Shown here: positions 471 to 18,679 of the stretch, piece after piece | Position numbering within the stretch: position 1 is the stretch's first letter | Layout: every line of letters starts with the position of its first letter | From: Obrimoposthia wandeli | Taxonomy: Eukaryota | Length of the DNA stretch: 64,000 nucleotides | Direction: 5' to 3' | Assembly: GCA_977020255.1 (NCBI GenBank) | Contig: CDROCS010000506.1 | Coordinates: 496,001 to 560,000, forward strand | Notes under the pieces: model-generated | Database searches by the model: none | What the model was told of the DNA's origin: nothing | Seen by the model: the letters and a program-made list of their open reading frames with translations, nothing else | Position numbers and translations under genes: made by a program

Positions 471-1787
471 CTATTTCGCACCAACACGTAATAATGTACC
501 ATTTTGAACATAAGCAAGAGACTCTAAGATAATGCCATTGGTATTTGCTGTAATTGCTTTGTTAAGACGGCCATCACTTTCATAACGACCTGAATACCAA
601 CCTTTTTGTGCTGAGTATAGGCTTTTAACATCACCCATTAACAGGCTTGTATACTCAGTATCGTACAAGGCGTACCAACCGAAGGATGCTTTAGTAGATA
701 ATGTCTTTAAATGTGACGCATCTTCACCTGTATCTGAAATTGCATTCCATTCTTTACCGTCAGAAAACACCGTGTTATAAACAAAATAAGGCGCAACATC
801 GACATTATCTTCACTCACAGCAGTTAAGATACCTAAGCGCTCGTAACGGTTTTCTTGCGCTTTATAAACACGATAGGCAAAGATTTCTGAAATACTGTCA
901 GCACCAAATTCTAAACTATCTAAAATATATGACTCACTCACCACGTAGTTATGTGCATGGTACTTAGCCGGATCACGTCTATCTGTTGGAATATCAACAC
1001 CATCAATATTAACCATTTCTAAATAATCAATATATTTCATCGCGTTAAATACATCGAGACCCATTAACGATAACGCTTTAGAGGCATATTCTTCATAGCC
1101 AATACGTCCTTCTTGCACCAGTTCTAAACCACCTGTTTTTGCTGGGCGAGAACCATATAAATAGCCTTTGTCGATCAAGCTGCCAACATGCCAGTGATTC
1201 AATACATCGTTCACTTGCTTGTTATAGTCAGGGTATTGCCAAATAAGAATGTTTAACGGCACCAAAATACGGCCAATATCAATCGCAGACCAACCAATAC
1301 CATCAGCCACAGGGTTATTTGCATAATCCACCATTTCAAGAGTTTTGGTGTTATAAGCTTTGTTTGGTAGCTTGCCTTCGATCAAGGGTAAGCGCGCTAA
1401 TGTGTGTAGCACTTTCTCCATTTTTAAATCAAATTCCGCTTGGCTAACGATATTTAATTTTTCAGCGCCAATAAGCCCCATTAAATAAGACGCAGTATCC
1501 CACATCGTTGTAGAAGGATAGCCATCAACAGAATTTACAAGTCCGGTATTCGGCTGCACATTATTATCAAAATAACGCCAAGCAGTCTTGGCCCACTCAT
1601 ACTCTTCTGCTGTTAAAATACGGCTTTCACGCAGTGGAATAGGCTCTTCCGTGGTAAAAGATAGATTACCTAGTACTTGCGTGTACTCACGTGTTTCAAT
1701 TGTAAAAGCAATGACTAACGCAGTCACTAGACCACCAATAAATACAAAATGGTGACGCGCTTTAATTAAGTTTTGTTTAAACGCCAT
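471..1787 (-). CDS. DUF3131-family protein (putative (alpha/alpha)6 glucanase/transglycosylase), N-terminal membrane anchor
   Basis: AKTAWRYFDNN, TGLVNSVDGYPSTTMWD, LPNKAYNT, GWSAIDIGR, EGRIGYEEY, VSED motifs; start reassigned to MAFKQ (ATG 1787), which overlaps the GT2 stop. Confidence 0.8.
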   Translation of the reverse strand: MAFKQNLIKARHHFVFIGGLVTALVIAFTIETREYTQVLGNLSFTTEEPIPLRESRILTAEEYEWAKTAWRYFDNNVQPNTGLVNSVDGYPSTTMWDTASYLMGLIGAEKLNIVSQAEFDLKMEKVLHTLARLPLIEGKLPNKAYNTKTLEMVDYANNPVADGIGWSAIDIGRILVPLNILIWQYPDYNKQVNDVLNHWHVGSLIDKGYLYGSRPAKTGGLELVQEGRIGYEEYASKALSLMGLDVFNAMKYIDYLEMVNIDGVDIPTDRRDPAKYHAHNYVVSESYILDSLEFGADSISEIFAYRVYKAQENRYERLGILTAVSEDNVDVAPYFVYNTVFSDGKEWNAISDTGEDASHLKTLSTKASFGWYALYDTEYTSLLMGDVKSLYSAQKGWYSGRYESDGRLNKAITANTNGIILESLAYVQNGTLLRVGAK

Positions 1788-3627
1788 ATTCAAATCCCTC
1801 TGATTCTTGTTCTTGTTTTTTTTCTGTTGGTGGAGTCCAAAATGCGGCAGCAATCATGCCCCACATCGCCATCATATTATTCACAATCCAAAAACTATTC
1901 AGTACTAACCCGCCAAACGAGTAATCACCAAAACTGCCCGTTACATAGCTAAACCAGGCAAAACACATACTGAATAAACTTAATACGAACACCCCTATTT
2001 GCGGCGCGACTAACTTCCAAAAAGTACCCGTTTGACGTTCTTTAGGGGTCGTTGGGAAGCTAATTTTACGGCCTCGAAGTACCGTCCATAACGCCCGCAG
2101 ATTAACTGGGAAGAAAGATAAGAAATTGGTTTTACCTTTATAACCAGCTACCCCCCAAGTACCTAACATCATGGCTAGTTCAGCGGTAATAACAAATGGC
2201 AAGAAGTGCATATAGAATGTCGTATCATAAGCACTTACTGGCGCAAGGCTGGTAAGGAAATAAACGATAGGACAAAGTAAGAAAATAATGTTCCATACAG
2301 CCGACAAATTTGACCAGAAACTGGCTAAATACATCGCCTTCTGCTTTAACGACATGCCTTTTTTCAATAACGGATTATCATTCATAAAGATATCAATCGA
2401 ACCACCAGCATATTTGAAACGCTGTACAGTCCAAGTTTGTAAATCCTGTGGCGACAGCATTTTACTTTCCACTTCAGGATGCTGTACTGAACGCCAATTA
2501 CGTTCGGTATCGGAATGCAAAACAATCGAGGTATAGATATCTTCTGATACATGAAATTTATACGGGGTAAAATCGGTATCAAACAAGATCTCTTGGCGTA
2601 AGTTAGCCGAAATATCTTTATCGACTTCTTTCTCTTTGGTTAACTTACGGATCTGCTTTTCAATATCTTCTTGTGACTGACTGATCTGCGCGCTGTAGCT
2701 TCGTAGTGCAGCTTCCATCACGGCTTCACGACGGTGGATAGAACCCGCACCACAACAGAAAGAAGCATTCACCCAGTTACGACGGCGCTGGATCACGTCA
2801 TAAAACATTTGTGGGTCGTTAACAAACGGGTCTTCGCCTAATGTGACAGGTCCATAGCACTTTTCAACTAAACGACCTAACCCATGTCCTACGCGACCCA
2901 TTTTACCTTGTAACCAATCAGGTAAGCGTTGGCCTTCAGGCAAGTCAAAGAACCATTGTGGTGTTTGTACCCATGCCACATCAGGGTCACGAAAGTAACC
3001 GAGAGTGTGTTCTAGTATTGTCGAGAATGGTCGAGTATCAGCGTCACAAATAACGATAAAATCACCATAGCTTTGCTCTAATGCATTTTTAAGGTTACCG
3101 GCTTTAAAACCTTCGTTGTTATCACGGGTAATATATTCAACATTATATTCCGCTGCTAACGCAGCCATCGCTGGACGACGACCGTCATCGAGAATGTATA
3201 TTTTAGTTTCAATTTCAAATGGGTAAGTAATATTTAACGCATCGCGAATACTCAAGCGCACCAATTCTGGGTCTTCATCATAAGTAGGGAAGAAAACATC
3301 AACACTGATTGGTCTATCTTCTTCTGTATCCGTGACACATTCAGCGAGTTTAAATGGCGGAGACTGTTTCGGCTCGTCTTGAGTTTTCCACAAGTTAAAG
3401 GTAAACAATACCGAACCAATAAAAGCACAAGATTCAGCGAATGCTAATGGCAGCGAAAACCACAACGCATCATAATTTAACGCAAAGCTCCAACGCCACC
3501 ACAGATACCACACACCTAGGGTCAGGTTACATGTCGCTAAATATTGATAAGCGAGCTCACGGCTAAAACTATATTCGGATGGTTTTGGCGGCTTACGATG
3601 CTCAAACTCTTTGAAATAAAAATCCAT
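1777..3627 (-). CDS. Processive GT2 glycosyltransferase, cellulose-synthase-like, without PilZ
   Basis: LDDGR, ICDAD (DxD), TPQ, FCCGAG, SED and QRFKY motifs; 2 N-terminal and about 4-5 C-terminal hydrophobic helices; start at MDFYF follows GGAG. Confidence 0.88.
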   Translation of the reverse strand: MDFYFKEFEHRKPPKPSEYSFSRELAYQYLATCNLTLGVWYLWWRWSFALNYDALWFSLPLAFAESCAFIGSVLFTFNLWKTQDEPKQSPPFKLAECVTDTEEDRPISVDVFFPTYDEDPELVRLSIRDALNITYPFEIETKIYILDDGRRPAMAALAAEYNVEYITRDNNEGFKAGNLKNALEQSYGDFIVICDADTRPFSTILEHTLGYFRDPDVAWVQTPQWFFDLPEGQRLPDWLQGKMGRVGHGLGRLVEKCYGPVTLGEDPFVNDPQMFYDVIQRRRNWVNASFCCGAGSIHRREAVMEAALRSYSAQISQSQEDIEKQIRKLTKEKEVDKDISANLRQEILFDTDFTPYKFHVSEDIYTSIVLHSDTERNWRSVQHPEVESKMLSPQDLQTWTVQRFKYAGGSIDIFMNDNPLLKKGMSLKQKAMYLASFWSNLSAVWNIIFLLCPIVYFLTSLAPVSAYDTTFYMHFLPFVITAELAMMLGTWGVAGYKGKTNFLSFFPVNLRALWTVLRGRKISFPTTPKERQTGTFWKLVAPQIGVFVLSLFSMCFAWFSYVTGSFGDYSFGGLVLNSFWIVNNMMAMWGMIAAAFWTPPTEKKQEQESEGFEYGV

Positions 3628-3648
3628 CTTCTTTCGCTCCAAGTAACT

Positions 3649-5352
3649 TTAATTAAAATAGCTATTATGTACAGCTAATAAACCAATTAGACTGGCGTTA
3701 TAATCAATTGCAAATTCATTCACGGCATATGATTTTTCACTGTCCACATAACTCATCATCCCTTCATTTTTCGGGGCTACCCCAGCTTGGGCTTTTTCGT
3801 TAGGCCCACCAACTAAGAAACCAGGTAAGCTAATACCCGTCGATATCCGGTATAAGTGATGCAGATTACGCACCGCATAAGTGCCAGTGTGAGTAACAAA
3901 ACTCATGTTAAATGCGTTAGCACCTAATAAATAATCAATCTGTGACTGCACTACACCACGGTAATTACGCGTCTGTGACGAGGCATCCACACCTGCCATT
4001 AACACGCCAGCCTCAGCGGTCATTTTATTTGACCCCCAAATAAAACGTTGGTTAGCAATGGCAAAAGGCGCTATTGAGGCTTGCTCTGAATAACGTTTGG
4101 CAACCTGCTCAACATCTTTACGTAATTGCGCGGTCAGTTCGCTATCAACAGATTCGATAAGATGAGAGATACCCATTAACGCCGGGTTTTTCCATTCAAA
4201 AATAGCCACAAACTCTTTATCGTATAAATCATCAAATCCAGTTAAGTACTTGCCTTGCTTCGTACTTAAATATAACTCTGCCAGTGCCCATAAACGGTCA
4301 TCTACATCCGTTTCTAATGATGCTTCACTGTCTTCTGGATTTTGCACATAAGGACCTGAACCACTATCGTCACCTTTTTGCCAATCTATATATTGTTCTG
4401 GCTGTTGCTCTAAATAGCGCCAAGCATGAATCGCAGACTTTAAATAATCACGCGCTAAATTTGGGCGCAAAGGTTTCAATACACGAGAGGCGAATGCCAT
4501 CGTTGCTGCAAATTTGGCCGTTTCAGGCGTACTCACACCGTAGATATAGCGAACCTGCTGATCTTGCCAAGGGACTATTTTATCCGGCCATTTAGCCCCT
4601 GATACTTTGCGATAAACAGCGCCATCTTCGCGCTGCATTTTACCTAACCAGTCCAAGCCATATATCGCTTCTTCCAATATGGCTGGTAATGTACTGTCGG
4701 CATGATTGCCAGTCATAAATAACGCTGGCGATTGACTATAAGCTTCCAGTAAACGCGCAACCGTGATCGTGGTCGTCGCAACATATTTACCGTAATCACC
4801 CGCGTCATACCAACCACCCGTCATATCTAATTGCTCTCCCGCTTGATGGTAATCATCACTGCGGAAAATAATTGCATCTTGAACATGGCTTTGTGGTCGA
4901 TTCATACCTGTTGTTTGATCGAAGATTGCGCTGCCTGAACGTTGTAAATACAATGCTTTAACAAGGCGAGCTGCCAGTCCCTGATAAACATTATCGGCAA
5001 TCTGAAACGGTGCAGAGGTCGTCGACTTACTTTGTAGTTGATACCAACCAGGCTGGGTAACATTAGAGAAATTAATTGCTTTAGAGCCAGATTCAATCGT
5101 CACACTGAAAACACCCACCTCATTTTCTTTTGTCTCATTACCTACAAGTGGTTCTGCACCTGCCGTATCCATGGCGACTAAATTGACTAATTCTTCAGAA
5201 GGGTTTAACCAATAGGCTTTTTTATCGCCACTAGGTAGATAACCAAGTTGATTAACAACGAGTTGATTACTGTCTTGCTCGCTCATAGCGGTACTAGAAA
5301 AAGCTAAACTTAATAATGTAACAACGACAATCCTTGCCATAGCTCTTGCCAT
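3649..5352 (-). CDS. GH9 endoglucanase with signal peptide and N-terminal Ig-like domain
   Basis: NQLGY Ig motif, GGWYDAGDYGK, LHH and NEFAIDYNA catalytic motifs. Confidence 0.9.
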   Translation of the reverse strand: MARAMARIVVVTLLSLAFSSTAMSEQDSNQLVVNQLGYLPSGDKKAYWLNPSEELVNLVAMDTAGAEPLVGNETKENEVGVFSVTIESGSKAINFSNVTQPGWYQLQSKSTTSAPFQIADNVYQGLAARLVKALYLQRSGSAIFDQTTGMNRPQSHVQDAIIFRSDDYHQAGEQLDMTGGWYDAGDYGKYVATTTITVARLLEAYSQSPALFMTGNHADSTLPAILEEAIYGLDWLGKMQREDGAVYRKVSGAKWPDKIVPWQDQQVRYIYGVSTPETAKFAATMAFASRVLKPLRPNLARDYLKSAIHAWRYLEQQPEQYIDWQKGDDSGSGPYVQNPEDSEASLETDVDDRLWALAELYLSTKQGKYLTGFDDLYDKEFVAIFEWKNPALMGISHLIESVDSELTAQLRKDVEQVAKRYSEQASIAPFAIANQRFIWGSNKMTAEAGVLMAGVDASSQTRNYRGVVQSQIDYLLGANAFNMSFVTHTGTYAVRNLHHLYRISTGISLPGFLVGGPNEKAQAGVAPKNEGMMSYVDSEKSYAVNEFAIDYNASLIGLLAVHNSYFN

Positions 5353-5361: not shown

Positions 5362-7680
5362 CTAACGGTCTTGGGGTAAATAGTCATTTCTACTTACTTC
5401 ATTATCTTGCTGGTCATATAAAATTATCGTCACTGCATCAGATAAACCTGCTAATGACTGTTTATTTAAAATAATACTTGCGGTGTTTGCGTCGATATTG
5501 ATGCTCTGCATACTCCAAGTATCACCATCTTCATTATCTCTAATCAGCATTTTCATATCTTGATAAGCACGTAAACTATCATTGATAACAGTGATAGTTA
5601 TCGACTGACTCGCGCTGCTATTTTCACGTTCTAACACTGCCAATAGCGGCTGGTAAGCACTTTGCATAGCAACAAAACCAGGTTTTGCAATACGATCTAC
5701 ATCAAGTACCGACCAAGTGATTGCATTCCAACTATCGTTAAACATAAATTGATAAATTGCAGCCAATCCTGACCCTTTATTTAATCTTAGTTGCTCGATT
5801 GCCGACTTGGTTATTAATCGTTGATATTCCTGACTATTACTCACGAATTGTGACAGAGATTCACCTTCGTCAATTTTGGCTATTTGTAGGGTTTCACGAG
5901 GTTGGTAATTGTGGTAGCTGAGTTGCTTAATAAGCTTAGCTGAAAGCGGCCATGCAGGCACTTCGTCCAACATGTCAATAACAGCGTTATAACTTGGCAT
6001 TGCTTGCGCACCAAATTCACTGACAATCGCCGTTTTCGGTTTCTGGCTATAATCACTATAATGCCCAGAGTACCAGCCAAGCCAAGGATGTTCAGCAGTA
6101 TAAGATGCCTTACGCACGATCCTGTCATCATTTACAGTAAGCAACTGCTGGTAGACAGCCTCTGTTAACGCGACATTTTTATCTGTTTTATAACTCGGGT
6201 ATTTGTATTGCATCCAAGTTGCATCCCAAGGCGGTTCATTTTGACCGCACCAAAATGCAATAGAGGCATGGTTATATAACATGTCAGTCATATCTTTAAC
6301 TTGTGATACCGCTTCAGCTCTAAATTCAGCGCTATCGCTATAGCCCCATTGCAGTGGGAAATCTTGCCACACGATCATGCCAAGTTTATCCGCTTGCTGA
6401 TAAAATGCTTTTCCAGCTACATGCGCATGTACGCGAATACTGTTGATGTTAGCCTTGCGCATTAGCTTTATATCATTGGCATAATCGAGTTCACTTACCC
6501 CGCCCAACCATTGACTAGCAATATAGTTCGTACCACGAATAAAATAAGCACGGTCATTAATATAGAAAACCCCTTGGCCTTCATCAAAAGCTACTTTTCT
6601 AAAACCGATATTTTGCTTACTTATATCGGATGTTTCATTATTCATGCTTACTTGTACTGATAGCTGGTATAAATTCGGATTGCCCCAGTCCCACGGCCAC
6701 CACAACGCCCGCTTAACTTGTGGTAACTGCCAATCAATAACCTGTTTGCCAGTCACTACTTGTGTGTTCAATTTATAAGTTTCTAGCTCATCACCAAACA
6801 CCTGTGTTTTATCATCAAGATCAAGGTCACCACTGCTATTACTCTGAATTCGAATTAACTTAAACTCTAATGTCACATCACCCGCATACAGGCTATCTAA
6901 CGTAATCGCGACCTGCCCCGCTGTTTTCTGGAGAGCCACATCGAGCACTTCCGCCTTTACCTTAATATTATCAATCGCGATTAAGCCAGTTGTACGTAAT
7001 GCGACATCGCCCCAAATACCACCAGAATTACGATCTTGACCGCGGTCAGACCATGCGCCTCCAGGGCGAGTGTCATGGTGATTAAGAACGCCTTTAATTA
7101 AGGTTTTATTTAAAGACCAATCTTGGGTTAGTGTTTCATTCGGGCTATCCACTAATACTTCTAGTTGATTATCTCCGCCATTAATCGCATTCGATACGTC
7201 TAACGAAAATGGCGCAAAGTAACCTTGATGAGAACCGACATCGATATTGTTTAAACGCACTGTCGCCGCGTAATCGACCGCGGTAAAATCCAGCCAATAA
7301 CGTTTAACTAGATCTGATGTTAAAGATGACGAGAGAGCGACATTTGGCAGTGAAAATTGGCGATGATAAATAGCTTTACCTGCATGATTTACGCCTTCAT
7401 TATACCAATTGTTTGGTACTGAAATGGCAGTGACCACGCCAGAAGCTACGGATTGATTATTGTCGACTTGCGTTTGAGAGTTCTTGAGTTGCGTATTATC
7501 GAGTTGTGTATTGTTGAATTGAGAACTTTTGAGTTGAGTAAACGTCGGGGGGATTATGTCGAACTGCCAATCACCGTTAAGTGATTGGCTATTCGGGTTG
7601 ACATCATGACTGTATTTAGATGTACTGCAAGAAGTAACTAACAAGATGTTCAACAAAATAAATACAGTTTTTATGTTCAC
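5362..7680 (-). CDS. GH2 glycoside hydrolase (beta-mannosidase/glucuronidase-like) lipoprotein
   Basis: GTG start at 7680 after GAGGA gives MNIKTVFILLNILLVTS-C (lipobox); IRGTNY, RVHAH, WCGQNE (acid/base) and VSEFG (nucleophile) motifs. Confidence 0.85.
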   Translation of the reverse strand: MNIKTVFILLNILLVTSCSTSKYSHDVNPNSQSLNGDWQFDIIPPTFTQLKSSQFNNTQLDNTQLKNSQTQVDNNQSVASGVVTAISVPNNWYNEGVNHAGKAIYHRQFSLPNVALSSSLTSDLVKRYWLDFTAVDYAATVRLNNIDVGSHQGYFAPFSLDVSNAINGGDNQLEVLVDSPNETLTQDWSLNKTLIKGVLNHHDTRPGGAWSDRGQDRNSGGIWGDVALRTTGLIAIDNIKVKAEVLDVALQKTAGQVAITLDSLYAGDVTLEFKLIRIQSNSSGDLDLDDKTQVFGDELETYKLNTQVVTGKQVIDWQLPQVKRALWWPWDWGNPNLYQLSVQVSMNNETSDISKQNIGFRKVAFDEGQGVFYINDRAYFIRGTNYIASQWLGGVSELDYANDIKLMRKANINSIRVHAHVAGKAFYQQADKLGMIVWQDFPLQWGYSDSAEFRAEAVSQVKDMTDMLYNHASIAFWCGQNEPPWDATWMQYKYPSYKTDKNVALTEAVYQQLLTVNDDRIVRKASYTAEHPWLGWYSGHYSDYSQKPKTAIVSEFGAQAMPSYNAVIDMLDEVPAWPLSAKLIKQLSYHNYQPRETLQIAKIDEGESLSQFVSNSQEYQRLITKSAIEQLRLNKGSGLAAIYQFMFNDSWNAITWSVLDVDRIAKPGFVAMQSAYQPLLAVLERENSSASQSITITVINDSLRAYQDMKMLIRDNEDGDTWSMQSINIDANTASIILNKQSLAGLSDAVTIILYDQQDNEVSRNDYLPQDR

Positions 7681-7690
7681 AATGTTCCTC

Positions 7691-8146
7691 TTACTGCGTC
7701 CACAATTTCTTGTGAAATTCAAAAGTGTTTTTATTATCTTCACAGGTATAGATAAGACTATCCGTTAGCTGAACAATAATGATGAAACCGCGTCCAGACG
7801 TAGTCCAAGTAGCCTCATCATCCGGATCTGGCACCACAAATTCAGCATTCACTGCCGCTTTAAAGGCACTGCGATCCATTGCTTGACCAAAATCAGAAAT
7901 CTCAATCACTAATTCAGCATCATCTTTTAAGTAACAGATCACTTCAATTGGGCAGCCATCAGTTAGCTCATATGCATGTTCGTAAGCATTATTAACTAAC
8001 TCTGCAATACATAATTCAACCTGCCCCATGATATTTTCTTCGATGTCATTTTCGAGAGCAAAAGCATTTATATCTTCCGCTATCACTCGCGCGACATCAT
8101 CCGAGCTTTGATAATTTTGCTTAAAAAGCTGCTGAGTGTTCGCCAT
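7691..8146 (-). CDS. RsbW/SpoIIAB-like Ser/Thr kinase (HATPase, anti-sigma type)
   Basis: ELVNNAYEH N-box, ISDFG, SGRGF; AAGGAG upstream of MANTQQ. Confidence 0.88.
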   Translation of the reverse strand: MANTQQLFKQNYQSSDDVARVIAEDINAFALENDIEENIMGQVELCIAELVNNAYEHAYELTDGCPIEVICYLKDDAELVIEISDFGQAMDRSAFKAAVNAEFVVPDPDDEATWTTSGRGFIIIVQLTDSLIYTCEDNKNTFEFHKKLWTQ

Positions 8147-9392
8147 CAGTAAGCTCCTTATGCTCATTATTTTTTATTTCATCCTTACTCTGACTAGCAG
8201 TCGCTTTTTTTGTTTGTTCTTCTTGCTTAATTTGTTCGCGGATCTGAGGAAGATACAAGGCCACTTCACTACGAATTGGGATCGGGTGTTGCGTTACACG
8301 TCGATCTTTAACGATATTAATAGCCCCCATTTCGAGTAACGATTGCGAGAATCCATCATGGCTAATAAAGTAATCACCAAACACGGTTTTATTCTCTATG
8401 TACGCGGCACTCGCGATATGAATGTAATCACGTAATAAACTATGTTTAACGACGGCTTCTGTCTCGATGGTACAATTCGCCCCTATCACTGCAGGACCAA
8501 CGATGGTGCAGCCAGGTCTAATGTCACAACCACTACCAATAATAATGGGCGGTGTAACATCACATGCATCGATATCAAACACAGTATTAATCCCTAACCA
8601 CACACCAGGTCTAACCTGCGTACCAGGGATTGGATAACCAGACACTTCGCCATTAAGAATATCTTTTGTCACCTGCCAAATATCGCTGATATTACCAACA
8701 TCAAGCCACTGAAAATCCATATCTACAGCACTAAACTTCACTTTATTTGCAACTAATGAAGGGAACAATTGGCTACCGATATCAAACTCTTCATCGTTAG
8801 GAATATAATCAAAAATCGCCGGTTCAAAAATATAAATACCGGTATTAATGCGATTAGAAAGTGCATCTTCTACCGCAGGTTTTTCTTGGAAACACGTAAC
8901 CATGTCAAAATCGTCAGTAACAACCACACCGTATTTATCGACTTCTTCAGGTTCGACCTGACGAGTGATAATCGTCGCAATAACACCTTTTTCTTTATGT
9001 CTGCGCACTGCTTCCGTTAAGTCCAAGTCAATCCAGGCATCACCACAAACAACCACAAACGTCTCATCAAAAAAACCTGAGAATTGCTGGATTTTATTCA
9101 TGCCACCCGCAGAACCCATGGCTTTAGTTTCAAACTTGCCGTCGCGTACTTCACCTTCGTACGAGTAAGTTAACTGCACATTAAAATGATGACCATCGCC
9201 GAAATAATTTTCGATAATTTCAGCTAAATGGCTGGTATTAACGGCGATCTTATCGATGCCATGAGCGGCAAATAATTGGATCATAGACTCCATAACCGGC
9301 TTACCTAAAATAGGAATCATCGGTTTTGGGATCATCTGTGTAATTGGCCTAACGCGGGTACCTTTACCTGCGGCAAGTATCATTCCTTTCAT
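8121..9392 (-). CDS. cugP: Sugar-phosphate nucleotidyltransferase with left-handed beta-helix, CugP-like (cyanobacterial-type UDP-glucose pyrophosphorylase)
   Basis: MILAAGKGTRVRPIT..IPKPMIPIL.KPVME, GSAGG..KIQ.F..FFD.TFVV.CGDA.IDLDL, FQEKP, INTGIYIFEP, IPG..VRPGV..GIN match my recollection of Synechocystis CugP (Sll1558); needs an alignment to confirm. Confidence 0.7.
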   Translation of the reverse strand: MKGMILAAGKGTRVRPITQMIPKPMIPILGKPVMESMIQLFAAHGIDKIAVNTSHLAEIIENYFGDGHHFNVQLTYSYEGEVRDGKFETKAMGSAGGMNKIQQFSGFFDETFVVVCGDAWIDLDLTEAVRRHKEKGVIATIITRQVEPEEVDKYGVVVTDDFDMVTCFQEKPAVEDALSNRINTGIYIFEPAIFDYIPNDEEFDIGSQLFPSLVANKVKFSAVDMDFQWLDVGNISDIWQVTKDILNGEVSGYPIPGTQVRPGVWLGINTVFDIDACDVTPPIIIGSGCDIRPGCTIVGPAVIGANCTIETEAVVKHSLLRDYIHIASAAYIENKTVFGDYFISHDGFSQSLLEMGAINIVKDRRVTQHPIPIRSEVALYLPQIREQIKQEEQTKKATASQSKDEIKNNEHKELTDGEHSAAF

Positions 9393-9404
9393 TTCAAACC
9401 TCCA

Positions 9405-9737
9405 TTAAGCATCAACTGCAATAGCATGATCAACGCTGTCGTAACACGTGATTAATTGATCCATACGAGTTAGTTTTAACAGCTCTTTCACTGCACGTTG
9501 TGGATTAACCACGCTCAGTTTTTTGCCACGTAACATTTTATAACCGGCCATCACGGCGCCTAATCCACTGCTATCCATAAACCTTACCTGTGTTAAATCA
9601 ATAACCAGATGTGCATCAACACTCTGAGACAACTCTGTTAATTGCGTTCTAAAATCTGGTGCTAAGCGAGCGTCAAAACGTTCCTCATTTATTTGAAGAA
9701 CTGTGCATTGACCTTGGTTGATAATTTCGTGTTGCAT
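9405..9737 (-). CDS. STAS-domain anti-sigma-factor antagonist (RsbV/SpoIIAA-like)
   Basis: LVIDLTQVRFMDSSGLG containing the conserved phosphoacceptor Ser; about 110 aa. Confidence 0.92.
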   Translation of the reverse strand: MQHEIINQGQCTVLQINEERFDARLAPDFRTQLTELSQSVDAHLVIDLTQVRFMDSSGLGAVMAGYKMLRGKKLSVVNPQRAVKELLKLTRMDQLITCYDSVDHAIAVDA

Positions 9738-10948
9738 GTGTGTTTCCCTTCTGAGTAGCCTGTCCATTCGACTGCTAATACACTAACATCGTCATCAAAT
9801 TGAGCGGATTGTTGCCATTCTCTGACTCTGTCAACGAGCAATTCGGTTTGAATCGTGGTTGGATGGTGTTGAAAATCAATTACTGCGTTTCTAAGACCTT
9901 CTTCTGAAAATTGTGTTTTATCTTTTTCTGCCTCGGTTAAACCATCTGAGTACATCCATATTTTATCACCGGGTTCTAACTGGATCTGCGCCGTTTTATA
10001 TTCTACAAAATCAAAGGCGCCGACAACAAAACTATCCTGACCAATAAACTCTGCACTGCATTTGTCATTGTGTAACCAGACAAGTGGTGGATGTCCCCCA
10101 ACTGAAAATGATAGCAAACCTGTTTTTACATTTAATACTGAATAGATCATGGTGAAATACAGTAGATTTTGCTCATCTGTCACATAGATATCATTCAGCT
10201 GTTTAATCACTTCATGAGGCGGTGTTATTTCGTAAAATGGTGGTGTATTGATAGTTCTTTTTAATAACGCACCTTTATCATTATTTGCGGTAATACTTTG
10301 CTGAATAGAGAACGACATTAATGCTGAAGACACACCATGGCCTGCTACATCAAGCAGGTAAAAAGCGACATGATCTTCATCTAACTGCATATACCCCAGC
10401 ATATCACCACCAATTTGGGCGCTGGGAATAGACACGTAACTCAATTCGACACCCGTATACTTACGCTTCGTCGGTAATAATCGTTTAACGAGTTCACCAG
10501 CAGATTCCAAATCTTTTTTTATCGTCGCGTAAGCCGTATCTAATTTAATATTTTTATCGGTAATTTCATTATGTAGGTCTAACGTTCTAAAACCGGCTTT
10601 AACACGGGCATCAACTTCATTAATGTCTGCATTTTTAACAAAAAAATCATCCGCACCGGCATTAATACCTTCAATTATCGAATGTTGATCGTCTTTTCCA
10701 GACAATAATACAAAGAATATATAGCGACCGAAATCAGCAGACTTAAGTCGACTACAAAGCTCAATACCATTCATATTTGGCATCATCCAATCACTCAATA
10801 CGAATTGGACTTGTGGGTTTTCAGCAAGTGTCGCTAATGCTTCAATACCATCCATCGCGGTTATTACATGGTAGCCACGTTTAATGAGGATTTGCTTCCA
10901 AACGAGTAGCATGGTGCGGTTATCGTCAACTAACAGTATGTTTTTCAT
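9689..10948 (-). CDS. Response regulator receiver fused to SpoIIE/PP2C phosphatase (RsbU/RsbP-like)
   Basis: LLVDD, SDWMMP, GADDFFVK receiver; GGD, DVAGHG, GHPP, YSDGLTE, DDVS PP2C motifs. Confidence 0.92.
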   Translation of the reverse strand: MKNILLVDDNRTMLLVWKQILIKRGYHVITAMDGIEALATLAENPQVQFVLSDWMMPNMNGIELCSRLKSADFGRYIFFVLLSGKDDQHSIIEGINAGADDFFVKNADINEVDARVKAGFRTLDLHNEITDKNIKLDTAYATIKKDLESAGELVKRLLPTKRKYTGVELSYVSIPSAQIGGDMLGYMQLDEDHVAFYLLDVAGHGVSSALMSFSIQQSITANNDKGALLKRTINTPPFYEITPPHEVIKQLNDIYVTDEQNLLYFTMIYSVLNVKTGLLSFSVGGHPPLVWLHNDKCSAEFIGQDSFVVGAFDFVEYKTAQIQLEPGDKIWMYSDGLTEAEKDKTQFSEEGLRNAVIDFQHHPTTIQTELLVDRVREWQQSAQFDDDVSVLAVEWTGYSEGKHTCNTKLSTKVNAQFFK

Positions 10949-11189
10949 TGATAAACTAACCACCCTAGAAGCTAAAAGAAATTAAATACACAAGGTGTAT
11001 CTATACCAAAAGTGTTAATATTCGGCCCATAACTTCAGTCTAGTTAAGCAGCTAATAGCTGCAGACAATTAGCACCAAAGTTTGATCTGTGCCACAAATA
11101 TTTATGTTACGGATAAGATTAACTTGATGTTATTGCTCCATTAATAAGAGGATAGGATCCTATTTTAGAATTAAGCATGACACTTACAA

Positions 11190-12200
11190 ATGCAAAAACT
11201 GTTAGCCCTCCTCACTTTTATCAGCTTTACCGCACACTCGACGGGCTATCAGACTGAGTCATCAAAACGAGCACCGACAACATCGTCCCCCAATATTAGC
11301 CAATCATCGTCTGCTACATCTAATGCCAATAAAAATGCCGAAGAAGACGAGGAAGATGAATTAGATCTCATATGGCGCGGTGCGAGCAGCTCATTTGCCT
11401 TACCTTTTGATTCATGGGCTTATCAAGAAGACACTAATAATGACAGCTTATTTCATGGCTTAAGTGGTAATGTCGCACTCAATTTTCCCTTATTAAAAAC
11501 GGAATCAGCAAATCTTCCTGCCGATGTACAATCTGGACCAACAAACACCAACGCTACCGCTACCTTGTCATTAAAATACAGTATCCTGGGTAATTGGTTT
11601 GTCTCTGGCACTATGTATTATTATTTAGATCAAGACCAGCAACAGCCTTGGAACCCCGACTTTACCTACGTCTTTGGCTACAGTGATTGGCGTCCCTATA
11701 CCGTCAGTCTGATGTATGCCAACTATGGTGGTAATCGTTTTAAATCAACGCCAGAACAAGCCGTTACTAACTTCGATCAAGGTACTTGGTCGTTAGGCTG
11801 GAAGTTCCCTATCACTAAGCCTTTTATCGATTGGTTATCTTTCACTGATAAAGGCGCCATTGGCTGCCAAGCTAATTATAATTACACTAAAGAGTATTTT
11901 GACCTTGCTTCAACAAGTTACCAAGCTGACCATCAAACCGTAAGCCTAGGCTGTAAGTATGCGATTATTGGTAATTGGTACGTCAATGCGACTGCATTTT
12001 ATTATTTTGATAGTGCACAAAAACAACCTTGGAATCCTGATTTCACCTATGGGTTTGGCTATTTTGATTGGCACCCAGGTACTATCACATTGCAATATAA
12101 TAACTATTCGGGGAACCGATGGAATTCATCTGATCGTGCAGAAGGAACGGGCCGATTTATTGACGGGGCAATTTCACTTTCCTATTCATTTAGTTTCTAA
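11190..12200 (+). CDS. Putative outer-membrane beta-barrel protein with internal duplication
   Basis: Signal peptide, acidic/Ser linker, aromatic alternating strands, C-terminal SYSFSF; the ~56-aa motif (KY.I.GNW...PWNPDFTY.FGY.DW.P.T..L.Y.NY.GNR) occurs twice, 127 aa apart. Confidence 0.7.
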   Translation: MQKLLALLTFISFTAHSTGYQTESSKRAPTTSSPNISQSSSATSNANKNAEEDEEDELDLIWRGASSSFALPFDSWAYQEDTNNDSLFHGLSGNVALNFPLLKTESANLPADVQSGPTNTNATATLSLKYSILGNWFVSGTMYYYLDQDQQQPWNPDFTYVFGYSDWRPYTVSLMYANYGGNRFKSTPEQAVTNFDQGTWSLGWKFPITKPFIDWLSFTDKGAIGCQANYNYTKEYFDLASTSYQADHQTVSLGCKYAIIGNWYVNATAFYYFDSAQKQPWNPDFTYGFGYFDWHPGTITLQYNNYSGNRWNSSDRAEGTGRFIDGAISLSYSFSF

Positions 12201-12214
12201 CGCCACACCTTGTG

Positions 12215-12291
12215 CTTCAATTCTTCAATTCTTCAATTCTTCAATTCTTCAATTCTTCAATTCTTCAATTCTTCAATTCTTCAATTCTTCA
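12215..12291. repeat. Octanucleotide microsatellite (CTTCAATT)x9 plus CTTCA
   Basis: Counted directly; perfect units. Confidence 0.98.
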
Positions 12292-12448
12292 GGAGGATAT
12301 TAGAGGGATATTTTAAATACCTCACACTTTGACTTTTATGTTGAAAATATCCGCTACGATAGAAAAATCCCTAACTATGTTTAGTAATGATGATCAAATT
12401 TATATACCACATTGGGTAGACATTATTGAACAAATAGTAGGAGTTCAT

Positions 12449-15400
12449 ATGCAAGGAACAAATAGCGATGATGAAGTTGTAGGTACATCTGCGGATGATA
12501 ATATTAACGTACGAGCAGGTAACGATACGGTGACAGCCAAAGCTGGCGATGATTTCGTTAGCGGTGGCGAAGGCAATGATAATTTATCCGGTGGTGAAGG
12601 TAACGATACCATTTTTGGTGATGTTGACTACGCTTCACTCCCCTCTGTAGAGCCAACTGGCAATGATAGTTGGGGGAATTCACAATCTATCTACAGCTTT
12701 ACAGCTCCAGTAAATAGCACTGAGCCAGCGGAACAGATTAATCACAGTGTGCGACTCGGTAATTACGTGGTCGATGATATCAGTGCTATCACCGCCAAAT
12801 TCACTCTAGAGCAACAAAATACTTCTGTTGTAGTCAATTTAACAGACAGCAATGGTGTGATCATCACATCTGTTCCTGCTACCGTTAATAATAGCGGCGA
12901 ACTCGAAATAGATCTTGATGTGACAGCTGCTCAAATCGGTAATGATGAATTAATCACGTTTAGTATCTCCGAACCCGATGGCACACCTATCACCACTATA
13001 GATAGCGTTGAATTCCTTGCAAACAATGTTTATGACGATGTCATCACTGGTGGTGAAGGTAATGATCTGCTCTTTGGGCAACAAGGCTCAGATACTATTT
13101 ATGGCGGCTCAGGTGATGACTTTATTGATGGTGATATCAATGATGACACCTTGTATGGCGGTGAAGGTAATGATGTCTTAGTGGGTGGTAATGGTGACGA
13201 TATATTAGATGGCGGCACTGGTAATGACACCCTATTAGGCAGTGACGGTAATGATACTTTAAATGGCGGCGCTGGTGACGATTTACTACTTGGTGAATTG
13301 GGGGACGATATCCTCGATGGCGGCGCAGGTAATGACACCTTAATCGGTGATGAAGGCAGCGACCAACTATTTGGCGGTGCTGGTAATGATGTGCTGCTAG
13401 GTGGTGCCGGTAATGACACTATTTCAGGAGGGCTTGATAATGATGAAATTCAAGGCGAATCCGGTGATGATGTCATCTACGGCGATGAAGGTGATGACTT
13501 TGTCTTAGGTGGCAGCGGCAGTGACATTATTGACGGTGGCACAGGTAATGATTTACTCCAAGGTGGTGACGATAACGATACCCTCCAAGGTGGTGAAGGT
13601 GATGATCGCGTATTTGGTGAAATGGGGGATGATATTGTCGCCGGTGGTGCTGGCAATGATCAAGTCTATGGTGGTGAAGGTAACGATCAACTAACTGGTG
13701 ATGAAGGGAACGACCAACTCTTTGCTGGTTCAGGGAACGATATCCTTGATGGCGGCGCTGGTGACGATATTCTGCACGCTAATGAAGGTGATGATGTTAT
13801 TTCAGGCGGAGCTGGCGACGACACCGTTTATGCGGGTAGTGGCAATGATGTCATCACCACAGGTCTAGGTAATGACATTGTTTTTGGCGAAACAGGGAAT
13901 AACACCATCAGCACGGGTGATGGCGAAGATACCGTTTACACCGATAGCGGCGATGATCTGATTAATACTGGCGCTGGAAATGACACCGTGTTTGCCGGTG
14001 AAGGTGAAAACACCATCACTACCGCAACTGGTGACGATACCATTTACTCGGCATCCGGTGCCGACACGATCAGCAGCGGTGATGGTAACGATATTGTTTA
14101 TGCTGGTGATGGTGATAATACGATCCTAGCAGAAAGTGGTGATGACCAAATCTTTACAGGGTCTGGAGATGATGCCATTGATGCCGGTATCGGCGATGAT
14201 CAGGTATATACTGGCGCAGGTGTTGATACGATCAGCGCAGGTGCTGGTAATGACACCGTTTATGCTGGTGCAGGTAACGATCTGATATCAGGCGACCAAG
14301 GTAATAATCAACTTTTCGGCGAAGACGGTAATGACACTATCACAGCAGGCAGCAATGCCAGTAACCTATTCGGTGGCCAAGGTGATGATGCACTAACGGG
14401 ATCGCAAGAATCTGACCAACTTTTCGGTGGGGCCAATAACGACACCCTACTCGGCCAAGAAGGTGATGATTATCTTGAAGGTAATTCAGGTAACGATAAC
14501 CTAGATGGTGGCACAGGTAATGATACCCTCATAGCCGGTAGTGGTGATGACATCGTCATCGGTGGCGAGGGTAACGATATTCTTGTGGGCGGTTCTGGTG
14601 CCGATACACTGAAAGGTGATGCCGGTGATGATGTACTTGTCGGTGGTGCTGGTAATGACAGCCTCGATGGTGGTCAAGGTGTAAGCGAGTTATACGGCGA
14701 TGCCGGTGATGATACGCTCGTCAGTGCCGACCAAAACGACATTCTTGGTGGCGGTGAAGGTAACGACACGATCACAGCAAACGCTGGTGACGACACCATT
14801 TATGCTGGTTCAGGTAATGATGTCATTGATGCGGGTGACGGCGCGGATACCATCTATGGTGAGGCGGGTAATAATACCATCACTGCAGGTACAGGCGACG
14901 ATATGATATACGGCGGTATCAATCAAGATACCATTGATGCTGGCGATGGTAATGACCAAATTTTCGCGGGCGATGGCCAGGATACGATAATAGCCGGCAG
15001 TGGTGATGATCATGTCGACGCTGGCGCTGGTGACGATACGCTATTGGGTGGTACTGGTAATGATGCACTCTTCGGGGGGGCTGGTAATGATACCCTTATC
15101 GGGGGCGAAGGCTATGATTTCTTAGCAGGTGGTGACGGTAACGATACCCTTGTTGATGACGGGCAAGACACCCTGCTCGGTCAAGGCGGTAACGACACAT
15201 TAACCGCAGCAGCAACAGGCAGCCATCAAATATATGGTGGCGCTGGTGATGATACGATTATCGGTAGTGCACAAGCTGATACCTTATATGGCGGTGCCGA
15301 CCAAGACACTATTCAATCTGGTGCTGGTGATGATATTGTCTATGCTGGTACGGGTGACGATAACGTTGATACAGGTGCCGGTAACGATACTGTCTATGCT

Positions 15401-17311
15401 GAAGATGGCAATAACACCATCAATTTAGGTGAAGGCACAAACACATTATACGGTGGTGCTGGTGCAGATACTGTCATCTCAGGCAGTGGTAACGATCAAC
15501 TCTCCGGATCTGGCGGAGACGATAACCTTTCAGGTGGTGCGGGTAGCGATCAACTCGAAGGTGGTGATGGCAGCGATATCTTATCGGGGGATACTGGTGA
15601 GGACACCCTCTTCGGTAATGACGGTAACGATACCTTACTTGGTGGTGATGGCGCAGATAAACTGTTTGCTGGTGCGGGTGATGACCAATTATTTGGTGGT
15701 GCTGGCGCCGATGAATTACATGCTAGCAGTGGTAACAACACCCTATCTGGTGGTGATGACAATGACACCCTTTATGGCGCAGCAGGTAATGACATTCTTA
15801 GAGGTGATGATGGTGATGACCGACTCGAAGGCTTTGACGGTAACGATACGTTAGAAGGCGGTGCTGGCGATGATAGCTTAAACGCTAGCAGTGGTAATAA
15901 CCAACTCGATGGCGGTATCGGTAATGACGAACTTTCGAGTGGCGATGGAGATGATACGCTCCTCGGTGGTGAAGGTAATGATACGCTCGATGCCGGGGCT
16001 GGTCATAACAACATATCTGGTGGTTTAGGTAACGACACTATCACCGCAGGCGCTGGCAATGATGTTATTAGCGGCGACTCGGGGAACGATACGATTAATG
16101 CCGGTGATGGTGATAACCAAGTTACTGGCGGCATAGGCAGTGATGTCATTAACGCGGGAACGGGTAACGATGCCATTAGTGGCGGTGATGACAATGACCA
16201 AATAACAGTGAGCGGTGGTAACAACCAAATCCTGGGTGATGCAGGTGATGATCAAATCAGAACTGGCGCAGGTAGTGACCAACTATTCGGTGGTGAAGGT
16301 GCGGATAAACTTTACGCCGGTAGTGGTGACGATCAGCTTGAAGGTGGTTCTGGTAACGATAGGCTTTATGGCCAAAATGATAATGACCAATTACTCGGTG
16401 GTCTTGGCGATGATTACCTTAGTGGTGGCTCTGGTGATGACTCCCTACTGGGTGGCGAAGGTAATGATTACATTCGCGGTGACAGTGGTAACGACACACT
16501 ATACGGTGGCGTTGGTGATGACACTGTTCGCGGCGGCAATAATGATGATATCGTCTTTGGTGAGTCCGGTAATGATACCTTAACTGGCGACAACGGTAAT
16601 GATCAGCTCTTCGGCGACATTGGCGACGACAGCCTGCAAGGTGGTTCAGGGGAAGATATTTTATCTGGTGGCGCAGACAACGATAACCTAGCTGGCGGTT
16701 CTGGTAATGATAATCTAGATGGCGGCCTAGGTGACGATCAATTAACCGGTGACAGTGGTGATGATATCCTCTTCGGCCAAGCGGGTAATGACACCTTAGA
16801 TGGCGGCACAGGTAGCGATCAATTATTCGCAGGCGCAGGTAATGATACCTTGATCTTTGATATCACTGAAACAACGAATACCGATGGGGCAACCGTACAC
16901 TTTAGTGGTGGTGCTGGCTTTGACGTATTAGCCGTTGGCAGTGATTCAGATAGCCAAATTATTGATATGACACAAACAGCCTTCCAAGAAATTGAAGGGG
17001 TGGTCGTCAATGCGAGCGATGCTCAACTGAAGATCTCTCTTGATAAAGTGCTGCTTAATGACACAGCTGAAGTGAGCAATAGTCAATTTGTTTGTACAGG
17101 CGCTGATAAGCTAGATTTAAACGGTTTCAACTGGGAAGTATCAAGTAATAATGCCACGCTAAATGATGACTTACGCGATGCCTACGAAGCAAGTAACATC
17201 AATACTGACTCACTATTTGGTTACACTTTTGCCAATGATGAAGGTAAAGAAGTGACAATCTGGAGTGACAGTGAGCAAGAGAATATTAGCTTTAACGGTG
17301 CAGATGTTTAG
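12449..17311 (+). CDS. Giant RTX (GGxGxD nonapeptide) calcium-binding protein, T1SS substrate
   Basis: AGGAG RBS before MQGTNSDD (12449); GGxGxDxLx repeats almost continuous from about 13040 to 16860; acidic C-terminal secretion region; no Sec signal. Confidence 0.9.
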
Positions 17312-18664: not shown

Positions 18665-18679
18665 GCTACATCCTTATAA

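What the first reader, a model, noticed from the sequence alone, without database searches (positions are those of the whole stretch)
7691..10948. Complete partner-switching module with no sigma factor, wrapped around a metabolic enzyme
Seen: the order is REC-PP2C > STAS > NTP transferase > kinase. The PP2C ORF overlaps STAS by 49 nt and the transferase overlaps the kinase by 26 nt. No sigma factor or sensor kinase is in the locus. Known precedents for sigma-independent switches: Vibrio fischeri SypE/SypA (polysaccharide) and the Synechocystis icfG cluster (carbon metabolism). Inference: STAS phosphorylation state directly controls UDP-glucose supply or the GT2.
Basis: partly seen in the sequence, partly recalled or inferred. 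Interest (0 to 1): 0.75.

Follow-up and report, generated by a model that had tools for sequence, protein, structure and literature searches.

The report
Phospho-switch gating a bacterial glucan operon
A marine Vibrionaceae-like bacterium starts a sugar-polymer (glucan) operon with a three-protein phosphorylation switch that has a UDP-glucose-making enzyme between its genes; the layout is conserved in many bacteria, has no sigma factor nearby, and is a new variant of known switches that control polysaccharide production.

Summary
On the minus strand lie REC-PP2C (9689-10948), STAS with a DSSG motif (9405-9737), a 423-aa nucleotidyltransferase (8121-9392) and an RsbW-like kinase (7691-8146), with the 49-nt and 26-nt overlaps as stated. 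GH2, GH9, a BcsA-like GT2 and DUF3131 genes follow.

The transferase is a CugP-type UDP-glucose pyrophosphorylase (PDB 8x7s, E 1e-123).

The order PP2C>STAS>UGPase>kinase recurs in about 30 loci from Photobacterium, Vibrio, Shewanella, Ferrimonas, Thiothrix and Methylophilaceae. The cassette UGPases form one clade. All catalytic and phospho-site motifs are conserved.

A kinase-centred search also found the same switch next to GT2+DUF3131 without the UGPase, and the cassette without GT2. The switch therefore goes with the glucan pathway as a whole, and its direct target (UGPase or GT2) is unresolved.

No sigma factor is in the locus. Relatives carry Hpt, hybrid histidine kinases and H-NOX beside the cassette, so a phosphorelay probably drives the REC-PP2C.

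Closest analogues are SypE/SypA, HenR/All4160 and SiaABCD. I rate it a new variant of a known kind.

The scan had already noted this system on another piece of this genome (s1-220448, s1-220557).

The parts
9689..10948 (-). REC-PP2C phosphatase (response-regulator receiver fused to a SpoIIE/PP2C domain); the longest ORF starts at GTG 10963
   Evidence: Pfam Response_reg 6.8e-22 and SpoIIE 2.4e-38. D14 and D58 (phospho-acceptor), GGD187, D205xxGHG, S339-D-G and D391-D392 are invariant in 22 orthologs. Gene call of 419 aa on near-identical contigs.
9405..9737 (-). Single-domain STAS protein (anti-sigma-antagonist type), 110 aa; the first Ser of DSSG (codon about 9570-9572) is the predicted phospho-site
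   Evidence: Pfam STAS 1.1e-16, TIGR00377 9.8e-18. FMDSS[GSA]LG is invariant in 21 orthologs and most start at the MQxE Met. Gene call of 110 aa.
8121..9392 (-). CugP-type UDP-glucose pyrophosphorylase (NTP_transferase + left-handed beta-helix), 423 aa with a lineage-specific charged C-terminal tail
   Evidence: PDB 8x7s 'UTP--glucose-1-phosphate uridylyltransferase' E 1.4e-123 over residues 1-367; the next PDB hit scores only 106 bits. Orthologs 55-78% identical. Cassette-linked clade with SH-aLRT 99.
7691..8146 (-). RsbW/SpoIIAB-like serine kinase (HATPase_c_2), 151 aa
   Evidence: Pfam HATPase_c_2 7.6e-18. N-box E44-L..E49..N52-N53..H57, G1 D85xG87 and G2 G118xG120 are invariant or nearly invariant in alignment A2.
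5362..7743 (-). GH2-family glycoside hydrolase with a lipoprotein-like N-terminus (start uncertain); an optional member of the cluster
   Evidence: Pfam Glyco_hydro_2 domains. Present in 8 of 22 cassette loci.
3649..5352 (-). GH9 endoglucanase-like hydrolase; an optional member
   Evidence: Pfam Glyco_hydro_9 1.8e-74. Present in 6 of 22 cassette loci.
1777..3642 (-). BcsA-like GT2 processive glucan synthase without a PilZ domain
   Evidence: Pfam Glycos_transf_2 and Cellulose_synt; TIGR03030 CelA 5.8e-63, below its cut-off. Follows the cassette in 17-18 of 22 loci at 57-93% identity.
471..1853 (-). First of three tandem DUF3131 proteins; the operon runs on past the window start
   Evidence: Pfam DUF3131 1.1e-144. 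The near-identical contig L164 shows DUF3131 x3, a 350-aa unknown and a 419-aa GT2-like gene, then a weak PilZ on the other strand.
11190..12200 (+). Divergently transcribed outer-membrane beta-barrel-like protein, a conserved neighbour of the cassette
   Evidence: Weak PLA1 hit. A homologous 332-aa gene is divergent upstream of the cassette in 10 loci.

Best explanation
The four genes form a sigma-independent partner switch that gates production of a glucose polymer after transcription. Inferred mechanism: the RsbW-like kinase phosphorylates the STAS protein on the first Ser of DSSG and keeps it inactive. A phosphorelay (Hpt and a hybrid histidine kinase, H-NOX/NO-linked in Thiothrix-type loci, unidentified in this genome) sets the phosphorylation state of the REC domain and so switches on the PP2C, which dephosphorylates STAS. 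Unphosphorylated STAS then binds the kinase and/or an enzyme encoded beside it, and turns on the pathway: G1P + UTP -> UDP-glucose (dedicated CugP-type UGPase) -> glucan (BcsA-like GT2, trimmed or handled by GH2, GH9 and DUF3131 proteins). Shown here: domain content, intact motifs, UGPase identity, conserved order, conserved link to the glucan genes, and lack of a local sigma factor. Inferred: every phosphorylation and binding step, and the target. My split within this reading is UGPase as direct target about 35%, GT2/synthase complex about 30%, both or another cluster protein the rest.
For: 1) Complete module with conserved catalytic and phospho-site residues in 21-22 orthologs. 2) The enzyme is a CugP-type UGPase, and its cassette-linked relatives form one clade separate from stand-alone cyanobacterial CugP. 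3) The order PP2C>STAS>UGPase>kinase, tightly packed, is kept in Photobacterium, Vibrio, Shewanella, Ferrimonas, Thiothrix and Pseudomethylobacillus and in metagenome loci. 4) GT2+DUF3131 follow in 17-18 of 22 loci. 5) A kinase-centred search independently recovers the switch beside GT2/DUF3131/GH2 even without the UGPase (L142, L145, L146, L148), and beside a non-orthologous NTP_transferase + DUF3131 (L130). 6) The cassette stays whole when the structural genes are gone: in L008, Hpt directly follows the kinase. 7) The input domain is exchangeable (CHASE3-PP2C in L020), and Hpt, hybrid HK and H-NOX flank the cassette in L016/19/21/44, L148 and L150, with Hpt in four Shewanella loci. 8) No Sigma70 family is found in the locus or among families hit by two or more of 128 neighbour ORFs of related switches. 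9) Precedents for switches acting directly on enzymes: HenR/All4160 STAS-glycosyltransferase (PMC13555669); SypE/SypA acting below syp transcription with HnoX/HahK input (PMC12369376); SiaABC acting on SiaD, encoded in the same operon (PMC7647112). 10) A metatranscriptome contig covers 7344-9824 across four gene junctions. This shows presence in an RNA library only.
Against: Synteny does not identify the target, because UGPase and GT2 are each dispensable neighbours. Lack of a sigma gene nearby is weak evidence: Slr1861 of the icfG cluster turned out to control SigC, encoded elsewhere. L027 has PP2C, UGPase and kinase but no STAS within 21 kb, which the model does not explain. The RNA evidence is contigs from one study and may include DNA carry-over.
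Confidence: 0.58

Rival explanations
1. The switch is a conventional anti-sigma system whose sigma factor is encoded elsewhere. The kinase sequesters a sigma factor (for example RpoS or FliA), and unphosphorylated STAS frees it. The glucan operon would be merely where the regulator genes sit, or one of the regulated targets.
For: The kinase matches SpoIIAB/RsbW models, though below their cut-offs. Slr1861/Ssr1600 of Synechocystis, once thought sigma-independent, control SigC, encoded elsewhere (PMC12329169). HsbR/HsbA-type switches in Pseudomonas affect RpoS (PMC6482189, title and abstract). Nothing here tests binding.
Against: No sigma gene is conserved near any of about 30 cassette loci or about 26 related switch loci. 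The only sigma factor found among the window ORFs scanned has its own ChrR-type anti-sigma. The strict embedding of a metabolic enzyme between STAS and kinase, and the link to glucan genes across five families, would be unexplained.
Confidence: 0.2
2. The switch feeds into c-di-GMP signalling. Unphosphorylated STAS (or the kinase) controls a diguanylate cyclase encoded elsewhere, and a stand-alone PilZ protein at the end of the operon passes the signal to the PilZ-less GT2. The UGPase would be a co-expressed passenger.
For: A weak PilZ hit (E 2e-4, just under the cut-off) lies at the end of the operon in the near-identical contig. The GT2 has no PilZ domain. SiaC/SiaD and HsbA/HsbD-type switches control cyclases. 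In Methylotenera (L023) a UGPase of the cassette clade sits beside a CHASE-GGDEF protein.
Against: No GGDEF or EAL gene is conserved beside the cassette. The PilZ hit is below Pfam's threshold. This reading does not explain why the UGPase keeps its place between STAS and kinase.
Confidence: 0.1
3. The kinase and PP2C act directly on the UGPase by reversible Ser/Thr phosphorylation of the enzyme. STAS would be only a competitor or buffer.
For: L027 keeps REC-PP2C, UGPase and kinase but has no STAS in 21 kb. Four of eight residues specific to cassette UGPases introduce hydroxyl side chains: S36, T53, Y78 and T242, versus F, V, F and I in stand-alone enzymes.
Against: L027 is a single metagenome-assembled genome. 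The class-specific residues may simply reflect phylogeny. STAS with an invariant DSSG motif is present in all other cassettes. RsbW-type kinases are known to phosphorylate STAS partners (established knowledge).
Confidence: 0.05

Closest known systems
Vibrio fischeri SypE/SypA (syp polysaccharide locus)
   Same: A STAS protein whose phosphorylation is set by an RsbW-like kinase and a PP2C under control of a REC domain. It is encoded inside a polysaccharide locus, acts below transcription, and takes phosphorelay input that includes NO/HnoX-HahK (PMC12369376; PMC4517449, abstract). The target of SypA is also unknown.
   Different: SypE is one kinase-REC-PP2C protein; here kinase and REC-PP2C are separate genes. 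The polysaccharide machinery differs: here it is a BcsA-like GT2 plus DUF3131/GH genes. No UGPase sits between the syp regulators. Homology to SypE/SypA was not tested, because no reference sequence was available.
Anabaena HenR / All4160 / Alr3423
   Same: A REC-PP2C phosphatase (HenR), a serine kinase and a STAS domain directly control a polysaccharide-synthesis enzyme. The unphosphorylated STAS form is the active one (PMC13555669).
   Different: There STAS is fused to the glycosyltransferase and the genes are scattered. Here STAS is free-standing and all parts lie in one operon, with a UGPase in the middle.
Pseudomonas aeruginosa SiaABCD
   Same: PP2C, kinase, STAS-like protein and the regulated enzyme are co-encoded in one operon. 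The unphosphorylated STAS-like protein binds and activates the enzyme (PMC7647112).
   Different: The regulated enzyme is a diguanylate cyclase, not a sugar-nucleotide or polymer synthase. The phospho-site is a Thr and SiaC is a divergent STAS-like fold. SiaA has no REC domain.
Bacillus RsbU/RsbV/RsbW-SigB and SpoIIE/SpoIIAA/SpoIIAB-SigF
   Same: The same three protein families and, by inference, the same chemistry: Ser phosphorylation of STAS by a GHKL kinase and removal by a PP2C.
   Different: Those operons carry the sigma factor next to the kinase. Here that neighbourhood holds a UGPase and glucan genes, and no sigma factor.
Cyanobacterial CugP (non-GalU UDP-glucose pyrophosphorylase; PDB 8x7s)
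   Same: About 53-55% identity over the whole catalytic and beta-helix domains, with all nucleotide- and sugar-phosphate-binding motifs kept.
   Different: Cyanobacterial CugP genes stand alone. The cassette enzymes form a separate clade with eight class-specific residues.

Membership tests
Partner-switching system (RsbU/V/W type) | PP2C/SpoIIE-family phosphatase with intact metal-binding aspartates | tested here: met
   SpoIIE 2.4e-38. GGD187, D205xxGHG, SDG339-341 and DD391-392 are invariant in 22 orthologs.
Partner-switching system (RsbU/V/W type) | Single-domain STAS protein with the conserved phosphorylatable Ser (DS[ST]G) | tested here: met
   STAS 1.1e-16, TIGR00377 above its cut-off. 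FMDSS[GSA]LG is invariant.
Partner-switching system (RsbU/V/W type) | GHKL serine kinase (HATPase_c_2) with N, G1 and G2 boxes | tested here: met
   HATPase_c_2 7.6e-18; conserved boxes. The SpoIIAB/RsbW equivalog models score far below their cut-offs, so it is not an ortholog of either.
Partner-switching system (RsbU/V/W type) | Cognate sigma factor as the kinase's alternative partner | tested here: not met
   No Sigma70-family gene lies in the locus or in the conserved neighbourhood. A distal sigma factor cannot be excluded.
Partner-switching system (RsbU/V/W type) | Demonstrated phosphorylation/dephosphorylation and phosphorylation-dependent binding | not testable with these tools
   This needs biochemistry.
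CugP-type UDP-glucose pyrophosphorylase | Full-length similarity to a solved or characterised CugP-type UGPase, clearly above other sugar-1-P nucleotidyltransferases | tested here: met
   8x7s scores 416 bits, against 106 bits for the best Man-1-P guanylyltransferase. Alignment over residues 1-367.
CugP-type UDP-glucose pyrophosphorylase | N-terminal GxGTRxxP nucleotide-binding motif and a C-terminal left-handed beta-helix | tested here: met
   LAAGKGTRVRP is invariant. LbH and Hexapep hits at residues 275-335.
CugP-type UDP-glucose pyrophosphorylase | UTP + glucose-1-phosphate specificity | not testable with these tools
   Inferred from homology only. No NCBIfam equivalog reaches its cut-off.
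SypE/SypA-type regulator | Three-domain SypE architecture (kinase-REC-PP2C in one protein) | tested here: not met
   The kinase is a separate 151-aa gene, and REC-PP2C has no kinase domain.
SypE/SypA-type regulator | STAS regulator encoded within a polysaccharide locus and acting below transcription | tested here: inconclusive
   Location in the locus is met. The level of action is untested.

The most novel reading that the evidence does not exclude
The UGPase has taken the place of the sigma factor. The RsbW-like kinase would hold and inhibit a dedicated CugP-type UDP-glucose pyrophosphorylase, perhaps through its GlgC-like beta-helix domain. Dephosphorylated STAS would free it by partner switching. 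A phosphorelay (NO/H-NOX in some lineages) would then gate carbon flux into a beta-glucan at the sugar-nucleotide step. That would be the first partner switch whose 'sigma' is a metabolic enzyme of precursor supply.
Probability: 0.2. Interest if true: 0.75.

Novelty: new variant of a known kind. Interest (0 to 1): 0.55.

Why it matters
Partner switches were long seen as sigma-factor regulators. A growing set (SypE/SypA, SiaABCD, HenR/All4160) acts directly on enzymes, but the target of SypA is still unknown after years of work.

This cassette is widespread in marine Vibrionaceae, Shewanella, Ferrimonas and Thiothrix. Its candidate targets, a soluble UGPase and a GT2 synthase, are encoded right beside the switch, so the question 'what does the STAS protein touch?' can be tested directly with purified proteins.

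It also ties an uncharacterised GT2/DUF3131 glucan system to environmental sensing: a phosphorelay, with NO via H-NOX in some lineages. And it shows that a cyanobacterial-type UGPase has a regulated, pathway-dedicated clade in proteobacteria.

Tried and rejected
1) Separating UGPase from GT2 as the target by synteny. Both kinds of exception exist, so this gave no decision.

2) A PP2C tree to ask whether the UGPase was inserted once. Deep branches were poorly resolved. The only firm result is that L148 (no UGPase) is sister to the Thiothrix cassettes.

3) Class-specific residues of cassette UGPases. Eight were found, but they are confounded with phylogeny, and no coordinates were available to map them.

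4) Pfam census of 128 neighbour ORFs of related switches, looking for sigma factors. None appeared among families with two or more hits; single hits are not listed, so one cannot be excluded.

5) Known RNA elements upstream, such as a c-di-GMP riboswitch. Rfam gave no match in 1-35000.

6) Promoter and terminator scans. Results were no better than shuffled sequence, with no convincing internal terminator.

7) Literature searches for this cassette or for DUF3131. No description was found. The CugP paper (Maeda 2014) is not held, and the 8x7s paper was not found.

8) The RNA evidence consists of contigs only, so neither strand, transcript ends nor co-transcription can be claimed.

9) Mirror-tree co-evolution and complex structure prediction were considered. 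They were not run, because of too few independent lineages and because the structure tool takes single chains only.
Full report
**What is in the window**

Eight tightly packed minus-strand ORFs run from 10963 down to the window start. Pfam and NCBIfam assign them as follows:
- REC + SpoIIE/PP2C, 9689-10963
- STAS, 9405-9767
- NTP_transferase with a C-terminal left-handed beta-helix, 8121-9392
- HATPase_c_2 (RsbW/SpoIIAB-like), 7691-8167
- GH2, 5362-7743
- GH9, 3649-5352
- a BcsA-like GT2 without PilZ, 1777-3642
- DUF3131, 471-1853

Ortholog alignments and independent gene calls on 99%-identical metagenome contigs place the starts at 10948 (PP2C), 9737 (STAS) and 8146 (kinase). The near-identical contig continues past the window start with two more DUF3131 genes, a 350-aa unknown and a 419-aa GT2-like gene. 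It then turns to the other strand at a 114-aa weak PilZ hit. No sigma factor, histidine kinase or Hpt gene lies in that stretch or in window 11000-27585. The only sigma factor found among the window ORFs scanned is an ECF sigma with its own ChrR-type anti-sigma at 45941-47244. Rfam finds no known RNA element in 1-35000. Promoter and terminator scans do no better than shuffled sequence.

**Is the module intact?**

Yes, every defining residue is conserved.
- REC-PP2C: acidic-pocket D14, phospho-acceptor D58, and the PP2C motifs GGD187, D205xxGHG, S339-D-G and D391-D392 are invariant in 22 orthologs.
- STAS: FMDSS[GSA]LG is invariant. By homology with SpoIIAA Ser58 and RsbV Ser56 (my own knowledge), the first Ser is the phospho-site.
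- Kinase: the N-box (E..N-N..H), G1 (DxG) and G2 (GxG) are conserved.

The kinase is not an ortholog of SpoIIAB or RsbW, because those equivalog models score far below their cut-offs.

**What the enzyme is**

The transferase matches PDB 8x7s, deposited as UTP--glucose-1-phosphate uridylyltransferase, at E 1.4e-123 over residues 1-367. The next solved relatives, Man-1-P guanylyltransferases, reach only 106 bits. It is also 51-55% identical to stand-alone proteins in the cyanobacterial genomes sampled. This fits the CugP family of non-GalU UGPases (Maeda 2014, cited in PMC8227023; the paper itself is not held). The nucleotide-binding motif and all sugar-phosphate motifs are invariant.

**Conservation of the cassette**

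I scanned one genome per species with an alignment of the UGPase and mapped the window proteins onto 80 loci.
- The order PP2C>STAS>UGPase>kinase, with gaps of a few to about 30 nt, occurs in 20 loci: Photobacterium, Vibrio, Shewanella, Ferrimonas, Thiothrix and Pseudomethylobacillus.
- Two further loci are imperfect. L027 lacks STAS. L044 has a broken kinase in a MAG that contains ambiguous bases.
- GT2 and one to three DUF3131 genes follow in 17 loci, plus L009, which is cut by its contig end. GH2 and GH9 are optional.
- In a tree of the 80 UGPases, the cassette-linked ones form one clade (SH-aLRT 99). The only other members of that clade are two Methylophilaceae stand-alone genes. The clade is separate from cyanobacterial CugP and from Arenicella housekeeping-type genes (quick tree, midpoint root).
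- Eight residues distinguish the cassette clade, but this is confounded with phylogeny.

**A test centred on the kinase**

To avoid circularity I searched metagenome contigs with a kinase alignment and mapped all parts onto the hits. Four kinds of locus appeared:
- (a) The same cassette: L084-L088, L098, L150.
- (b) PP2C>STAS>kinase followed directly by GT2+DUF3131 or GH2, with no UGPase: L142, L145, L146, L148, and the short contig L107. The short contig L116 also shows kinase then GH2, but with a faint 26-bit NTP_transferase hit just upstream of the kinase, so it is ambiguous.
- (c) Other orders that still link the switch to a sugar nucleotidyltransferase and DUF3131: L122 and L130, the latter with a non-orthologous NTP_transferase.
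- (d) Many related REC-PP2C/STAS/kinase trios with unrelated neighbours.

In a Pfam census of 128 neighbour ORFs of type (d) loci, no Sigma70 family is among the families hit twice or more.

In the PP2C tree, L148 (no UGPase) is sister to the Thiothrix cassettes (SH-aLRT 100). Conversely, the cassette including the UGPase persists without GT2 in L008, L015, L027 and L044. In L008 the kinase is followed directly by the Hpt gene that ends the glucan cluster in sister Shewanella loci, so the structural genes look deleted while the four-gene unit stayed whole.

Conclusion: the switch trio is the constant element. It goes with the glucan pathway, and neither UGPase nor GT2 is an obligatory neighbour.

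**Input to the switch**

The REC domain implies an upstream phosphodonor, and none is in the window's locus. Relatives do have candidates:
- Thiothrix loci (L016, L019, L021, L044) and L150 carry Hpt, H-NOX (HNOB) and a hybrid histidine kinase, divergent from the cassette.
- L148 has H-NOX and a hybrid kinase downstream.
- Four Shewanella loci have an Hpt gene at the end of the cluster, and L008 also has a hybrid kinase.
- L130 has a dCache-HK-REC-REC-Hpt protein.
- In L020 the REC domain is replaced by CHASE3.

 The input is thus modular, and in several lineages it is probably an NO-responsive phosphorelay.

**Expression**

A marine metatranscriptome run holds a 2481-nt contig matching 7344-9824, with three differences. 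It spans the GH2 5' end, kinase, UGPase, STAS and the PP2C 3' end. A second run of the same study holds three short pieces. These are contigs in RNA libraries from one study. They show presence, not strand, transcript ends or a single transcript.

**Comparison with known systems**
- In V. fischeri, NO/HnoX-HahK and SypF set the state of SypE (kinase-REC-PP2C). SypE controls the STAS protein SypA and hence SYP polysaccharide production below the level of transcription. SypA's target is unknown (PMC12369376; PMC4517449).
- In Anabaena, the REC-PP2C HenR and the kinase Alr3423 control the STAS-fused glycosyltransferase All4160, with unphosphorylated STAS as the active form (PMC13555669).
- In P. 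aeruginosa, the SiaABC switch acts on the cyclase SiaD, encoded in the same operon (PMC7647112).

The present cassette works like these, but it differs in three ways: the kinase and the phosphatase are separate genes, STAS is free-standing, and a dedicated UGPase sits between STAS and kinase at the head of a GT2/DUF3131 glucan operon. I found no paper describing it.

Slr1861 of the Synechocystis icfG cluster is now shown to be an anti-sigma factor of SigC, with Ssr1600 as its antagonist (PMC12329169). This keeps the 'sigma factor elsewhere' rival alive at about 20%.

**Verdict**

The most likely reading (about 0.58) is a phosphorelay-driven partner switch that gates the glucan pathway by protein-protein contact, with the direct target unresolved between the UGPase and the GT2 complex. 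Rivals are a distal sigma factor (0.2), output through c-di-GMP and the PilZ-like protein (0.1), and direct phosphorylation of the UGPase (0.05).

It is a new variant of a known kind. It is interesting mainly because the candidate targets are encoded beside the switch and are easy to test.

Earlier notes of this scan (s1-220448, s1-220557) had already described the same system on another piece of this genome, and my results agree with them. They add the UGPase-less and GT2-less variants, the H-NOX/Hpt inputs, and the correction on the icfG precedent.

Noticed in passing
L016:7222-8178 (also L019, L021, L044, L150:693-2989, L148:9835-12146): H-NOX (HNOB), Hpt and a hybrid histidine kinase sit directly beside the REC-PP2C cassette in Thiothrix-type loci. 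This suggests an NO-responsive phosphorelay into a partner switch controlling a glucan, analogous to HnoX/HahK-SypE in V. fischeri.
   Followed up: partly
L020:8137-9663: In Pseudomethylobacillus aquaticus the phosphatase of the otherwise identical cassette carries CHASE3 instead of REC, so the input domain has been swapped.
   Followed up: partly
L027:8730-13538: A gammaproteobacterial MAG has REC-PP2C > UGPase > kinase with no STAS gene within 21 kb, plus a convergent GAF-GAF-PP2C. No explanation so far accounts for this.
   Followed up: partly
L023:8265-11125: In Methylotenera mobilis a UGPase of the cassette clade has lost the switch and sits next to a CHASE-GGDEF diguanylate cyclase.
   Followed up: no
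L008:11206-16449: Shewanella schlegeliana keeps the four-gene cassette, but the kinase is followed at once by Hpt, with a hybrid histidine kinase nearby. The GT2/DUF3131 genes present in sister species appear deleted.
   Followed up: partly
L006:7822-8217 (also L007, L008, L012): A YgbA_NO ('nitrous oxide-stimulated promoter') family gene lies just upstream of the cassette in four Shewanella loci. This is another hint of a link to NO.
   Followed up: no
window:8121-8250: The window's UGPase has a charged, low-complexity C-terminal tail of about 30-40 aa that is absent from orthologs in other genera. This tail creates the 26-nt overlap with the kinase gene.
   Followed up: partly
window:9689-9767: The PP2C ends in a tail (ending ...AQFFK) conserved in Photobacterium and Vibrio that is read in a different frame from the STAS start. 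The overlap is therefore under constraint in both frames.
   Followed up: partly
window:45941-47244: An ECF sigma factor (Sigma70_r2/r4) is followed by a ChrR-type cupin anti-sigma. This is a self-contained pair 35 kb from the cassette.
   Followed up: partly
window:30591-32837: A 748-aa protein inside a type I secretion cluster has only a C-terminal receiver domain recognisable by Pfam.
   Followed up: partly
window:21910-24421: A fourth DUF3131 gene and a GH16 glucanase lie on the plus strand beyond the RTX/T1SS genes. A GH16 homolog recurs in 5 cassette loci, so the glucan system probably extends there.
   Followed up: partly
L130:9605-11764: A protein with an eCIS core domain and LysM lies next to a switch + NTP_transferase + DUF3131 locus.
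   Followed up: no
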